A DNA stretch of 64,000 nucleotides from Macrostomum lignano (Eukaryota), in assembly GCA_002269645.1 (NCBI GenBank), contig NIVC01001363.1, positions 241,707 to 305,706 of the forward strand. The letters run 5' to 3'. Shown in pieces: positions 10,142-13,100 of this stretch; the stretch's first letter is position 1, and each line of letters begins with the position of its first letter. The translations under genes and the position numbers were made by a program. The notes under the pieces were generated by a model, which saw nothing but the letters and a program-made list of their open reading frames with translations, searched no databases and was not told where the DNA came from.

Positions 10142-13100
10142 ATGCCAACCTACAAGACTACGCCGACAAGTGGTCGCAAGAATAGAAGAAAGGAAGAGGA
10201 CTTGAGAAGAATTAGGTGCGGGGACGTGGAAGTGAACCCGGGACCGGTGGAGAATAAAAATGAGAGGGAAAGATGCGCGGTATGTAGCAAGATGGCCGGA
10301 GGCAGAGGACCGAGATGTGCGGAGTGTGGGGGAGTCATGCACCTCAAGTGCAGTGACCTCACCAGGAGTCACTTCTACAGGATGGAGGGCGCCAATGCTA
10401 GCAATGCTTGGACGGGACCGTGTTGCAGAGTGGAGGAGAGGAGAAAGGAGGAGGAGGATGAGAAGCCGGTAACCGAGGCTGCGGACGTCGAAGGCGTGAA
10501 GGGCAGAGAGAGGACGGAAGCTGGGAAGGCGAGTGAAAGTGAAGACGAAGGAAGGGTGGTTTGGGCTAAGCTCACGGGATGGCCCTGGTGGCCGGCGCTG
10601 GTGCTTAAGGACGGAGACGTGGAACTGGAGAAGAGGAAGGGCAAGGAAGTCGAGAAGGTTAAATGGTTAGGGAATGGTGAGTGGACGTCTAAGATCAGCA
10701 CGAGATTGGTGGAGGAATTCGAGGAAAACTACGAATTGAGGCACCAAAAGCATAGGAGAGGAGCGTACGACAAAGCGCTTGCTCAGGCGTGGGAGGAGGT
10801 CGAAAAGCGGAAAATCCGAAACACTGTCAGTGCGGAGTTGAAGACCAACGGAAGTGTCGAGGTCGGAAGAAGCGACCAGACGGGCGGAGGGCAGGAGGCG
10901 ATGGAGGTGAAGGAGTGTGAACATGTTGGATGCACTGAATGCAACAAAAAGATGAGAGCGAGCACTATAGGAGTGGCCTGCACGCTCTGCGAGCGGAGAG
11001 CCCACAGAACTTGCTCTGGCCTAAGCAGGTGGAGAGCTGGAAAGAATGCTGCCTGGACCTGCAGAGGATGCTCTGTGCAGGGCACATTGCCGCTCGAAAG
11101 GAGAGATATGGAGTCAAGGGCTGTCCGCTGTGCTGAATGCCTCCGTTACTGCCGCAGAAATGTCGGAGCATGCTGTGCGATCTGCTCGAAGAGGATGCAC
11201 TGGAGCTGTGTGGGTGAAGTCAGCAGGAAACGTTTGGAAGAATGGAAGGTGAAAGGAGGATGGAAGTGCAACGAGTGCACCGCTGACCTGGCCAAGCAGG
11301 CTAAGAACAGGAAAGAGGCTGAGAGAGATGAGGGCATGAGCGGGCAGGGGAGTGAAGCAACCGAGGGACACCAAACCTGCTGGAAAATCCTTCAGTGGAA
11401 CTGCGACCACCTGCATGCCAAGAGTACTGAGCTGGCCAAGCTACTGGATGAGGAGGACGTGGATGTTGCGTTGATTCAGGAGACGAAGCTGAGGACAGAA
11501 GACCCTGACCCTTGTATACCAGGGTACGCGCTACAACGGAGTGACAGGCGCCGTGAAATAGGATGTTGGAAGGCGAGAGGTGGAGGCCTGGCCATCATAG
11601 TGAAGGAAGAATGGAGCTTCAAGAAGCTGAAAATACCGAGTGAGCAAGGAGAAGGAAGGCTCGAGTCTATGGCGGTGGAGGTGCAAAAGGGAGACGGGAG
11701 TAAGCTGAATGTGCTAAACTGCTACATGCCCCCAGGAGAAGATGGCGAATGGAGGAAATCGCTGAACAGGCTGCCTAGCGGAGAGAAATGGATAGTGGGA
11801 GGCGATTTCAACGCCCATGACGAGGCCTGGGATGGTGAAGTGGAAGAAGACGCTAGAGGTTCGACGTTGACCGAGTGGGCGGACGACAGAAACTTAGTGT
11901 GCCTGAATGATGGTAGCGCCACGAGAGTGAGCAAAGGTACAGGAATACGGTCGACGCCCGATGTCACCTTCTGCCACAATACGCAGGAGCAGCAGTGGTC
12001 CTGGAGCACCCTCCAGAAATTGAGCTCGGACCACCTCCCGATACTGCTGCAAGCCGGGGGTGGCAAGACCGAAGAAAAGGCCAGGAGGCTGATTCGCTGG
12101 AACTGGAAGAAGGCTGACTGGGAAGCGTTTAGGGACCGCGTGGAGGCTGGGTATAGGGAGCAAAAAGTTAATTGCAGAAGCATCGCTGGAGTTGAGGAAG
12201 GAGCCAGACGGGTCGTTTTAACGGCGGCTAGGAGCTGCATCGGCACGAAGGTGATCACCACCAAGAATAGAAATCTGATGGACGAAGAGGTCCGGAATGT
12301 GCTGGAAGAGAGAGACAGAGCTTTGGAGGAAGGAAACGGAGAACGTTGGATGGAGCTCGACGGCAACGCTAAGGAGCTGATCAGGGACAAGAAGAGGCAG
12401 GAGTGGAGACAGCATCTGGAGTCTAACGCGACGTCGCTCAAGATGTGGAATGTCCTGAACCAGCTTAAAGGCAAGAAAGGGGGAGGAGGAGCTGGAGAAG
12501 TCTTAGTGCATGGAGGAAAGGAATACAGGTCAAATGGTGCCAAAGCGGGAGCCTTCGCGAAAGAGTACGCCAAGGTCAGCCGGGTGCAAGTGCCCAGAAG
12601 TCACGGATGGGCGAAACGCCAGGTGACCCGCTTATTGAGCGAAGAAGGTCCGGACACGTGTGAGGGTAGAGAGCTGAGCATGGCGGAAACGAGACAAGCG
12701 CTCAACGAAATGGATGGCAACAAAGCGGCCGGCCCGGACAAAGTGCACCCTAAGCTGCTGAAGGAACTACCGGACTGCATGGTTGAGGTATTCCACGAGC
12801 TCTTCAGCTGGTCGTTCAGTAGTTCGGAAGTCCCACAGAACTGGAGAACGGGACGCATCATCCCGCTGCTCAAGCCAGGAAAGGATGCAGCGGAAGTTGG
12901 ATCGTATAGGCCGGTATGTCTCACGTCCTGCATTGGGAAATGGATGGAACGGATCCTTGCCAACAGAATGCAATACCACCTGGAGAGTAAGGGCTGTCTC
13001 AGCGACAACCAAGCAGGATTCCGTGCAGGGAGATCCACGGAGGACCAACTGCTTAGGCTCTCCCAGGCGATGGAGGATGCCTTTCAGGAAGGGAAGTGCG

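What the first reader, a model, noticed from the sequence alone, without database searches (positions are those of the whole stretch)
10142..11290. Intact LINE whose single ORF carries a multivalent chromatin-reader head: PHD-PWWP-PHD-PHD fused to APE-RT-RNase H
Seen: after a 2A-like motif the ORF encodes a PHD (about 10274-10426), a PWWP domain (about 10552-10802; VVWAKLTGWPWWPALV...VKWLG...YDKALAQAW with the cage aromatics apparently retained) and two more PHD fingers (about 10930-11070 and 11128-11280) directly upstream of the endonuclease. Established: PWWP domains read H3K36me2/3 nucleosomes (the LEDGF PWWP steers HIV integration), and PHD fingers occur in several non-LTR clades. A PWWP embedded among three PHDs in a non-LTR pol protein is not an architecture I recognise as described. 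Inference: the element may encode its own histone-mark-guided target-site selection. The perfect 13-bp TSD and stop-free ORF suggest recent activity.
Basis: partly seen in the sequence, partly recalled or inferred. Interest (0 to 1): 0.85.

Follow-up and report, generated by a model that had tools for sequence, protein, structure and literature searches.

The report
Flatworm LINE with built-in PWWP reader
An apparently intact jumping gene (a LINE retrotransposon) of the flatworm Macrostomum lignano carries a histone-reading PWWP domain, of the PWWP2A/B type, between the PHD zinc fingers at the front of its single protein; no relative or paper I searched has this combination, which suggests but does not prove that the element chooses its landing sites by reading chromatin marks.

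Summary
Window 10050-15148 is a 5,099-bp non-LTR retrotransposon. It has a perfect 13-bp target-site duplication, a (CAA)n tail and one stop-free 1,651-aa ORF: 2A motif, PHD1, PWWP, PHD2, PHD3, APE, RT, RNase H, CCHC. All catalytic motifs are present.

The PWWP is real. Pfam gives 41.5 bits (E 1.9e-10). PDB PWWP2B matches at E 4e-11. An AlphaFold model (pLDDT 86) matches only PWWP structures. The three aromatic-cage positions are all Trp.

The host is Macrostomum lignano; UniProt holds a spliced gene model of this same insertion. The element belongs to an unnamed clade of 2A, multi-PHD, APE-RT-RNase H LINEs with (CAA)n tails. None of about 55 relatives examined has a PWWP, so the domain is a lineage-specific insertion into the PHD1-PHD2 linker. 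Its nearest relatives are cellular PWWP2A/B domains at 38% identity or less, so no recent donor is visible.

An exhaustive HMMER search of 1.84 billion proteins and the full-text paper searches found no other PWWP-LINE fusion. Chromatin-guided targeting remains an inference. Only one insertion was seen. Repbase and other Macrostomum genomes could not be searched.

Verdict: a new variant of a known kind, of moderate to high interest.

The parts
10037..10049 (+). 5' copy of the target-site duplication, GCATGCCGAGCTG
   Evidence: A perfect 13-mer found only here and at 15149-15161 in the 64-kb window; the bases on either side differ.
10050..15148 (+). Complete LINE (non-LTR retrotransposon), 5,099 bp
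   Evidence: Bounded by the TSD and the tail. Purine-rich strand bias throughout, unlike the flanks. The flanks belong to another repeat whose paralogue at 17769-18530 is uninterrupted apart from about 57 bp at the site.
10050..10141 (+). Short 5' UTR; it begins CCGAGCTG, repeating the last 8 bases of the TSD
   Evidence: Read directly from the sequence.
10142..15097 (+). Single ORF of 1,651 aa, ATG to TGA
   Evidence: No internal stop. Motifs for APE (QWN, QETK, GDFNAH, SDH), RT (FADD), RNase H (TDGS, E, D, H..D) and C-terminal CCHC are all present.
10223..10246 (+). 2A-like ribosome-skipping motif DVEVNPGP (aa 28-35), after a 27-aa basic leader
   Evidence: Regex match. G-DVE-NPGP is invariant in the alignment with relatives. 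17 of the 40 nearest relatives carry an N-terminal (D/G)(V/I)ExNPGP. This position is described by Odon 2013.
10274..10426 (+). PHD-type zinc finger 1 (C4HC3; the last pair is CC)
   Evidence: Cys/His spacing. Pfam PHD 18.4 bits and C1_1 22 bits, both below cut-off. Homologous to the first finger of relatives, 50-57% identity.
10427..10549 (+). Acidic, purine-rich linker; the upstream part of the roughly 165-aa insertion relative to PWWP-less relatives
   Evidence: Alignment A1 shows the gap in relatives between PHD1 and PHD2. Purine content is 81%.
10550..10807 (+). PWWP domain, PWWP2A/B type; cage residues are the W of GW, the second W of PWWP, and the W of VKWLG
   Evidence: Pfam PF00855 E 1.9e-10. 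PDB PWWP2B E 4.4e-11. AF2 pLDDT 86.2 with a beta-barrel plus C-terminal helix. Foldseek's top 50 matches are all PWWP domains, the best being 4ld6. Nearest sequences are PWWP2A/B orthologues.
10931..11071 (+). PHD-type zinc finger 2 (canonical C4HC3 with W-x-C-x2-C)
   Evidence: Spacing. Pfam PHD 21.2 bits, E 3e-4, below cut-off. All ligand columns are invariant with relatives.
11129..11278 (+). PHD-type zinc finger 3
   Evidence: Spacing. Pfam PHD 14.9 bits. Weak PDB match to the Rco1 PHD. Ligand columns are invariant with relatives.
11390..12034 (+). Apurinic/apyrimidinic-type endonuclease (APE)
   Evidence: Pfam Exo_endo_phos E 5e-13 and Exo_endo_phos_2 E 4e-18; catalytic motifs present.
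12878..13633 (+). Reverse transcriptase
   Evidence: Pfam RVT_1 E 5.4e-36; FADD at 13388-13399.
14258..14653 (+). RNase H
   Evidence: Pfam RNase_H E 4.6e-12; D-E-D-H..D motifs.
14906..14956 (+). C-terminal CCHC zinc knuckle (CRGCGMEDETMEHIWDC)
   Evidence: Regex match; conserved in P0002-P0004.
15098..15148 (+). 28-nt 3' UTR followed by a (CAA)7CA tail (15126-15148)
   Evidence: The same short 3' UTR plus (CAA)n tail ends the contigs of four relatives, L001-L004.
15149..15161 (+). 3' copy of the target-site duplication

Best explanation
Shown. This is a full-length, coding-intact APE-type LINE of Macrostomum lignano. It belongs to a widespread but unnamed lineage whose single ORF reads 2A peptide, 2-5 PHD fingers, APE, RT, RNase H and CCHC, and whose copies end in (CAA)n. 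In this element a PWWP domain of the PWWP2A/B type, with flanking linkers (about 165 aa), sits in the linker between PHD1 and PHD2. The PWWP was already part of the RNA that was reverse-transcribed into this site, because the TSD and tail enclose the whole unit.

Inferred mechanism. After translation, 2A skipping releases a short basic leader. The PHD-PWWP-PHD-PHD head of the ORF protein, bound in cis to its own RNA, docks on nucleosomes. The PWWP cage reads H3K36me2/3, and its basic surface contacts DNA, as in PWWP2A, DNMT3 and LEDGF. The PHD fingers read the H3 tail. This tethering would place the APE nick and target-primed reverse transcription in H3K36-methylated (transcribed) chromatin. 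The element would thus carry in cis the tether that HIV borrows from LEDGF.

The confidence given refers to the inferred targeting function. The anatomy itself I hold at about 0.95.
For: Anatomy:
- ORF, motifs and Pfam domains.
- TSD and tail.
- Flank continuity in a paralogous repeat.

PWWP identity:
-.
- PWWP2A/B type: the best single-domain hits are PWWP2A/B orthologues from fish, lungfish, Trichoplax and an arachnid, plus PDB 4ld6. They share the C-terminal motif Y-x-L-R-h-x3-RRGAY-x-KA.

Cage:
- W/W/W at the positions of PWWP2A F666/W669/W695. Mutating W669 or W695 abolishes H3K36me3-nucleosome binding (PMC6191444).

The insertion is lineage-specific:
- Alignment A1.
- None of the LINE-body hits has a PWWP.
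- None of the 40 nearest relatives has one.

The domain has probably been retained under selection. The nearest PWWP in 1.84 billion proteins is 38% identical or less, although M. lignano proteins are in that library (P0001, P0044). Even so, the fold residues, the cage and the reading frame are intact. The segment shares the element's purine bias and GC3.

The head is modular in this clade, with 2-5 PHD fingers.
Against: - There is no functional or insertion-site evidence at all.
- Only one insertion was seen. It lies inside another repeat in a satellite-rich region. The UniProt entry is the same locus. So it is not shown that PWWP-bearing copies have transposed more than once.
- Asp266 of DNMT3B, next to the cage, is Asn here. 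It is Ser in PWWP2B, so this is not disqualifying.
- PWWP2A's own H3K36me3 binding is described as weak and needs the adjacent serine-rich stretch (PMC6191444). That stretch is absent here.
- PWWP domains also bind DNA and RNA non-specifically.
- The three fingers are below Pfam's PHD cut-off, and their ligand specificity is unknown.
Confidence: 0.45

Rival explanations
1. The PWWP works as a general nucleic-acid or nucleosome-binding module. It would stabilise the RNP, retain it in the nucleus, or partly replace the missing ORF1 chaperone. It would raise retrotransposition efficiency without directing insertions to any histone mark.
For: The element has no ORF1. PWWP2A's PWWP binds free nucleic acids as well as H3K36me3, and the mark-specific binding is weak (PMC6191444). 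The domain carries basic stretches (KRKGK, RHQKHRRG).
Against: All three cage aromatics are kept as Trp. Keeping them is unnecessary for plain DNA binding. The domain also sits among PHD fingers, which are histone-tail readers.
Confidence: 0.25
2. The PWWP is a neutral passenger. A piece of host mRNA was captured by template switching into one master copy, is tolerated, and has no role.
For: Only one insertion is documented. None of the relatives has a PWWP. LINE heads in this clade are plastic.
Against: No donor above 38% identity exists in a library that does contain M. lignano proteins. So the capture is not recent, or the donor is unsampled. After long neutral drift an intact frame, a confident fold (pLDDT 86) and an intact cage would not be expected. 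The composition matches the rest of the element. The copy carrying it did transpose.
Confidence: 0.12
3. The locus is not an autonomous element. It is either a host gene (a domesticated LINE-derived chromatin protein) or a chimera of a host PHD/PWWP gene with a LINE inserted downstream.
For: UniProt lists it as a 'PWWP domain-containing protein' gene model that is spliced to upstream exons. No second copy is present in the window.
Against: The TSD and (CAA)n tail enclose the head together with the enzymes. The 2A motif and PHD1 upstream of the PWWP, and PHD2-3 downstream, are all homologous to the heads of LINE relatives, so the PWWP is embedded in LINE sequence. All catalytic motifs are intact. 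The gene model removes the RT as 'introns' and reads through the TSD, which is typical of an annotation artefact.
Confidence: 0.06
4. The head acts against host control rather than in targeting. For example, it could compete with host H3K36me3 readers such as the PWWP2-HDAC complex, or recruit factors that keep new insertions transcribed.
For: The domain type is that of PWWP2A/B, the reader subunit of an HDAC/NuRD-type repressive complex on gene bodies (PMC6143588, PMC7670215).
Against: Only the PWWP is shared. There is no similarity to the regions of PWWP2A that bind MTA1/HDAC or H2A.Z. A protein that acts in cis at very low abundance is a poor competitor.
Confidence: 0.05

Closest known systems
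Unnamed clade of 2A, multi-PHD, APE-RT-RNase H LINEs with (CAA)n tails. Examples are P0002-P0004, P0062 and P0042 from beach-sand and other metagenomes and from Logan assemblies, and M. lignano A0A1I8IFP6 (P0044).
   Same: About 40% identity over 74-83% of the ORF. Same order of 2A, PHD fingers, APE, RT, RNase H and CCHC. Same very short 3' UTR and (CAA)n tail.
   Different: None has a PWWP. Their PHD1-PHD2 linker is 20-40 aa, against about 165 aa here.
APE-type non-LTR elements with an N-terminal 2A peptide, some with a PHD between 2A and APE (Odon et al. 2013, PMC3708506: Ingi, CR1, Crack, L2 and Rex1 clades)
   Same: Single ORF, 2A close to the N-terminus, and PHD between 2A and APE. RNase H together with 2A matches what is reported for Ingi.
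   Different: No PWWP is reported.
PWWP domain of PWWP2A/PWWP2B, the H3K36me3-reading subunits of a variant NuRD/HDAC complex (PDB 4ld6; PMC6191444; PMC6143588)
   Same: Best sequence and structure match. Same cage positions. Shared C-terminal helix motif.
   Different: Identity is only 30-38%. The rest of PWWP2A/B (the H2A.Z-binding and MTA1-binding regions and the serine-rich stretch) is absent. Here the domain is internal to a retrotransposon protein rather than at the C-terminus of a host protein.
LEDGF/p75 (PSIP1) tethering of lentiviral integrase to H3K36me3 chromatin
   Same: Works alike if the inference holds: a PWWP that reads H3K36me3 nucleosomes directs a retroelement's insertion machinery to transcribed chromatin. 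The LEDGF PWWP is among the structural matches.
   Different: In HIV the PWWP belongs to a host cofactor bound by integrase. Here it is encoded in the element's own protein, and the insertion chemistry is target-primed reverse transcription, not integrase strand transfer. It is not a family member.
Chromoviruses (Ty3/gypsy elements with a chromodomain at the integrase C-terminus)
   Same: A retroelement that carries its own Royal-family histone-methyl reader. This is established knowledge of the family.
   Different: LTR element and integrase rather than LINE. Chromodomain reading H3K9 methylation and heterochromatin rather than a PWWP.

Membership tests
APE-type non-LTR retrotransposon (LINE) | APE endonuclease N-terminal to a reverse transcriptase in one ORF | tested here: met
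   Pfam Exo_endo_phos E 5e-13 and RVT_1 E 5.4e-36; catalytic motifs present.
APE-type non-LTR retrotransposon (LINE) | Insertion hallmarks: no LTRs, a 3' A-rich or microsatellite tail, and a target-site duplication | tested here: met
   13-bp perfect TSD and (CAA)7CA tail. The element interrupts a repeat that is continuous in its paralogue.
APE-type non-LTR retrotransposon (LINE) | A multicopy family with independent (often 5'-truncated) insertions | not testable with these tools
   Only one copy in the window. The UniProt model is the same locus. No M. lignano genome is available in the collections.
I superfamily, Ingi/Vingi/Nimb-like clades | RNase H domain downstream of RT | tested here: met
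   Pfam RNase_H E 4.6e-12.
I superfamily, Ingi/Vingi/Nimb-like clades | Single ORF without ORF1, and a 2A near the N-terminus (as reported for Ingi) | tested here: met
   description in PMC3708506.
I superfamily, Ingi/Vingi/Nimb-like clades | RT-domain phylogenetic placement among Repbase reference clades | not testable with these tools
   No Repbase or RTclass1 reference set is available, and the supplement of PMC3708506 is not held. The clade is therefore left open.
PWWP domain (Pfam PF00855) | Profile match above the curated cut-off | tested here: met
   41.5 bits against 25.6, E 1.9e-10.
PWWP domain (Pfam PF00855) | Five-stranded beta-barrel followed by a helical bundle | tested here: met
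   AF2 model with pLDDT 86.2, five strands plus a long C-terminal helix. The top 50 Foldseek PDB matches are all PWWP domains.
PWWP domain (Pfam PF00855) | Three-residue aromatic cage | tested here: met
   W, W and W at the columns of PWWP2A F666/W669/W695 and DNMT3B F236/W239/W263. This is by alignment only.
PWWP domain (Pfam PF00855) | Binding of methylated H3K36 (or H4K20/H3K79) nucleosomes | not testable with these tools
   Needs biochemistry.
PWWP2A/B protein family | The PWWP domain is most similar to PWWP2A/B | tested here: met
   The best single-domain hits are named PWWP2A/B; PDB 4ld6 is the best match by sequence and by fold.
PWWP2A/B protein family | Full architecture: a long N-terminal region with H2A.Z and MTA1 interaction parts, and a PWWP about 100 aa from the C-terminus | tested here: not met
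   Only the PWWP aligns; the hits' matches are confined to query aa 131-225. The element is not a PWWP2 orthologue. Only the domain type is shared.
PHD finger (Pfam PF00628) | C4HC3 ligand spacing with a conserved aromatic residue before the last Cys pair | tested here: met
   Three matches to C-x2-C-x(9-12)-C-x2-C-x4-H-x2-C-x(n)-W-x-C-x2-C. Finger 1 ends W-x3-CC.
PHD finger (Pfam PF00628) | Profile match above the curated cut-off (24 bits) | tested here: inconclusive
   The window's fingers score 18.4, 21.2 and 14.9 bits. The homologous fingers of relatives pass (P0042 49.6, P0053 47.4, P0052 38.5).
2A ribosome-skipping peptide | C-terminal motif D(V/I)ExNPGP | tested here: met
   DVEVNPGP at aa 28-35; invariant in relatives.
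2A ribosome-skipping peptide | Skipping activity, which depends on the upstream tract | not testable with these tools
   The upstream tract here (LRRIRCG) is less like the LLxxAG of relatives and of FMDV. It needs an in vitro translation assay as in PMC3708506.

The most novel reading that the evidence does not exclude
A LINE that encodes its own H3K36me-reading tether. A PWWP2-type PWWP acts together with three PHD fingers as a multivalent nucleosome reader that steers target-primed reverse transcription into transcribed chromatin. This would be the first non-LTR element with a self-encoded, LEDGF-like, histone-mark-guided choice of integration site. It sits in a laboratory flatworm where the idea can be tested.
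Probability: 0.3. Interest if true: 0.85.

Novelty: new variant of a known kind. Interest (0 to 1): 0.6.

Why it matters
How LINEs choose insertion sites relative to chromatin is largely unknown. The known exceptions are sequence-specific elements and the replication-linked bias of L1. LTR elements and retroviruses reach particular chromatin through readers. Chromoviruses carry their own chromodomain, and HIV borrows the PWWP of LEDGF.

A LINE that has fused a PWWP with an intact methyl-lysine cage to its endonuclease-RT protein would show the same solution arising independently in target-primed retrotransposons. It would also offer a natural, compact 'reader plus nickase plus RT' protein.

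Macrostomum lignano is a transgenic laboratory model, so binding, insertion-site mapping and mutant tests are feasible.

The finding also shows that the N-terminal head of this LINE clade is a modular platform. It holds 2-5 PHD fingers, and here a PWWP as well, so accessory chromatin domains can be gained there.

Tried and rejected
1. Word-index protein searches with the head alone and with the PWWP alone at E up to 10 returned nothing, not even P0001. The index is too lossy for these queries, so I draw no biological conclusion from them.
2. Exact-sequence look-ups of the ORF (ATG and GTG versions) and of P0001 found no contig. Copy number in M. lignano could therefore not be assessed.
3. A single-sequence AlphaFold run on aa 87-386 gave pLDDT 38 and was discarded. 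The run with an alignment replaced it.
4. A JGI metagenome scan with PWWP-to-PHD2 found no relative.
5. An empty-site test against the paralogous repeat at 17769-18530 was only partly informative. That copy lacks about 57 bp around the insertion point.
6. The supplementary RT reference set of Odon 2013 is not held. The Vingi/Ingi and gastropod papers gave no diagnostic features. Clade assignment was dropped.
7. I considered that the ORF starts at GTG 9983, as in the ORF listing. I rejected this because that stretch is flank plus TSD read through in frame, and the ATG at 10142 lies inside the element.
8. I considered DNMT3 as the PWWP source. Its E 6.7e-13 comes from a tandem two-domain PDB construct, and each single domain scores only about 27 bits against 46 bits for PWWP2B.
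9. I considered a chimeric host gene and rejected it (see the rival explanations).
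Full report
OBSERVATION

A single ORF runs on the + strand from ATG 10142 to TGA 15095-15097 (1,651 aa). The ORF listing extends it to a GTG at 9983, but that stretch is flanking DNA read through in frame.

Pfam on the ORF finds five domains:
- PWWP (PF00855), nt 10550-10807, E 1.9e-10, 41.5 bits against a cut-off of 25.6.
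- Exo_endo_phos and Exo_endo_phos_2.
- RVT_1, E 5.4e-36.
- RNase_H, E 4.6e-12.

A regex scan places further features:
- DVEVNPGP at 10223-10246.
- Three C4HC3 fingers at 10274-10426, 10931-11071 and 11129-11278.

APE, RT (FADD), RNase H and C-terminal CCHC motifs are all intact.

ELEMENT BOUNDARIES

The 13-mer GCATGCCGAGCTG occurs exactly twice in the window, at 10037-10049 and 15149-15161. The second copy directly follows a (CAA)7CA tail at 15126-15148, which itself follows a 28-nt 3' UTR. The element is therefore 10050-15148, 5,099 bp.

Its purine-rich strand bias stops at both boundaries. The flanks belong to another repeat whose paralogue at 17769-18530 joins the two flanks directly, apart from a local difference of about 57 bp at the site. 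There is no second copy of the LINE in the window.

THE PWWP IS REAL

- phmmer against PDB sequences gives PWWP2B (4ld6) at E 4.4e-11 in one domain. It also gives DNMT3B, MSH6, NSD2/3 and others.
- A single-sequence AlphaFold run failed, with pLDDT 38.
- With a 30-sequence alignment of PWWP segments (A2) the model reached pLDDT 86.2 and pTM 0.75. It shows a five-strand barrel and a long C-terminal helix.
- Its 50 best Foldseek matches in the PDB are all PWWP domains: PWWP2B first, then HDGF, HRP-2, LEDGF and NSD2/3.
- The cage columns carry Trp, Trp, Trp (GW, PWWP, VKWLG). They align with PWWP2A F666/W669/W695 and DNMT3B F236/W239/W263.
- In PWWP2A, W669A or W695A abolishes H3K36me3-nucleosome binding (PMC6191444).
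- DNMT3B Asp266 is Asn here and Ser in PWWP2B.

THE FINGERS

Each finger of the window is below Pfam's PHD cut-off (18.4, 21.2 and 14.9 bits against 24). Finger 1 ends in CC.

The ligand spacing is canonical. All ligand columns are invariant in the alignment with relatives. The homologous fingers of relatives pass the cut-off (49.6, 47.4 and 38.5 bits). I accept them as PHD-type, of unknown ligand specificity.

HOST AND RELATIVES

The best database hit (P0001, 99% identity) is UniProt A0A1I8J844, 'PWWP domain-containing protein', from Macrostomum lignano. Its exons map to window positions 1340-1423, 6130-6177, 9926-12760, 13592-14464 and 14789-15094, reading through the 5' flank and the TSD. 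It is therefore a spliced gene model of this same insertion (an allele, homeologue or other assembly) and not an independent copy.

The next relatives are only about 40% identical (P0002-P0004). They read 2A, PHD x3-4, APE, RT, RNase H, CCHC. P0002 comes from a beach-sand metagenome, the habitat type of interstitial flatworms.

Four relatives' contigs end with a very short 3' UTR and (CAA)n, like the window element.

Alignment A1 shows that the relatives go from PHD1 to PHD2 through a 20-40-aa linker. The window element has about 165 aa there, containing the PWWP.

IS A PWWP FOUND IN ANY OTHER LINE?

An exhaustive HMMER search of the 419-aa head against 1.84 billion cluster representatives gave 131 hits at E <= 1e-3. 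Only P0001 has the whole head. The remainder fall into two disjoint sets:
- 15 hits carry LINE body (APE/RT) sequence, and further short N-terminal fragments match only through the 2A and PHD parts. None of these has a PWWP.
- The others are cellular PWWP proteins with no LINE body. They are mainly PWWP2A/B orthologues, which carry the PWWP about 100 aa from the C-terminus. N-PAC/GLYR1, DNMT3 and others also appear.

Of the 40 nearest LINE relatives, 17 have an N-terminal 2A, several have PHD fingers, and none has a PWWP. Full-text searches for PWWP together with non-LTR, retrotransposon, Repbase, RVT_1 or chromovirus terms found no report.

This test has limits:
- The HMMER search sees only PWWPs similar enough to this one. 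HDGF-type domains did not reach E 1e-3.
- TE proteins are under-represented in protein libraries.
- Repbase and Dfam could not be searched.

ORIGIN OF THE DOMAIN

The closest PWWP anywhere is 38% identical or less. Yet M. lignano proteins are in the library (P0001, P0044). So there is no recent donor in view.

The segment shares the element's purine bias and GC3. An intact frame, a confident fold and a complete cage at this divergence argue that the domain has been maintained by selection inside a LINE lineage. This is an inference from one sequence.

MECHANISM

Shown: the PWWP was part of the transposed unit. The copy carrying it completed target-primed reverse transcription, leaving a TSD and a tail.

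Inferred: 2A skipping releases a 34-aa basic leader. 2A in this position, with PHD between 2A and APE, is described by Odon et al. 2013 (PMC3708506). The PHD-PWWP-PHD-PHD head then tethers the RNP to nucleosomes. The PWWP reads H3K36me2/3 and contacts DNA, and the PHD fingers read the H3 tail. This would bias the APE nick to transcribed chromatin. Functionally this resembles the LEDGF-HIV tether and the chromodomain of chromoviruses, but encoded in cis in a LINE.

Rival explanations:
- General nucleic-acid or nucleosome binding without mark specificity.
- A neutral passenger domain.
- A host or chimeric gene.
- Interference with host H3K36me3 readers.

The single documented insertion lies in a repeat within a satellite-rich region. 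It neither supports nor contradicts the targeting idea.

COMPARISON AND NOVELTY

The element is a member of the APE-type LINEs. By RNase H, the single ORF and the 2A, it belongs to the I-superfamily and is Ingi-like, but RT phylogeny against reference clades was not possible. 2A and PHD heads are known. The PWWP is the new part, and it is of the PWWP2A/B domain type without being a PWWP2 orthologue.

I rate it a new variant of a known kind, with interest 0.6. The architecture is solid and unreported as far as I could test. Function and family size remain open.

Noticed in passing
window 17008-17355 (- strand): A 115-aa ORF with a clear Tox-ART-HYD1 domain (HYD1-signature ADP-ribosyltransferase, Pfam PF15633, E 5.8e-13, above the cut-off). 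This is a toxin-type domain sitting in a flatworm genomic region between repeats.
   Followed up: partly
window 1340-1423, 6130-6177 and 9926-15094: UniProt A0A1I8J844 (M. lignano 'PWWP domain-containing protein'; its UniRef100 cluster has n=2) is a gene model that splices upstream exons onto this LINE. It reads through the flank and TSD and removes the RT as introns. It is probably an annotation artefact or a chimeric read-through transcript.
   Followed up: yes
window 9740-10049 plus 15162-15560, and 17769-18530: The LINE sits inside another, unclassified GC-rich repeat that has a paralogue 2.6 kb downstream (72-89% identity). The paralogue lacks about 57 bp around the insertion site. Weaker pieces of the repeat are at 20236-20325 and 21135-21259.
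   Followed up: partly
window 10042-10057: The last 8 bases of the 5' TSD (CCGAGCTG) are repeated as the first 8 bases of the element. This could be microhomology or template jumping at 5' end joining, or chance.
   Followed up: no
L001 4399-4422, L002 4873-4892, L003 and L004 3' ends; window 15126-15148: All sampled members of this 2A, multi-PHD LINE clade end with a 3' UTR of about 0-35 nt and a (CAA)n or (ACA)n microsatellite tail. This is a possible clade hallmark and a hint about how reverse transcription is primed.
   Followed up: partly
L001 (ENA ERZ937839, beach sand metagenome): The closest non-Macrostomum relatives of the element come from beach-sand and other environmental metagenomes. 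They are probably DNA of meiofaunal animals, so this LINE clade is documented mostly through 'metagenomic' contigs.
   Followed up: partly
window 15579-16266 (- strand): ORFs containing a YADDLALL-type motif and neighbouring RT-like sequence suggest a decayed fragment of a different LINE next to the 3' flank. Pfam found nothing at E <= 0.01.
   Followed up: partly
window 42044-43066 (+) and 43063-44079 (+): An ORF with a complete protein kinase domain (Pkinase, E 4.3e-46). It is followed directly by a 15-bp tandem array (43095-44067) that translates into a repetitive ORF.
   Followed up: no
whole window, e.g. 1-912, 1667-2992, 6584-7071, 28632-33554, 43095-44067, 57619-58539: The window is unusually dense in tandem repeats: 26 TRF rows with score >= 150, periods of 2-222 bp, including about 5 kb of CT-rich arrays. 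These account for the strongly skewed composition blocks.
   Followed up: partly
P0004, P0052 (relatives): The number of PHD fingers in the head varies from 2 to 5 among relatives, and P0004 also has a long Gly-rich tract before the APE. The head of this clade is modular.
   Followed up: partly
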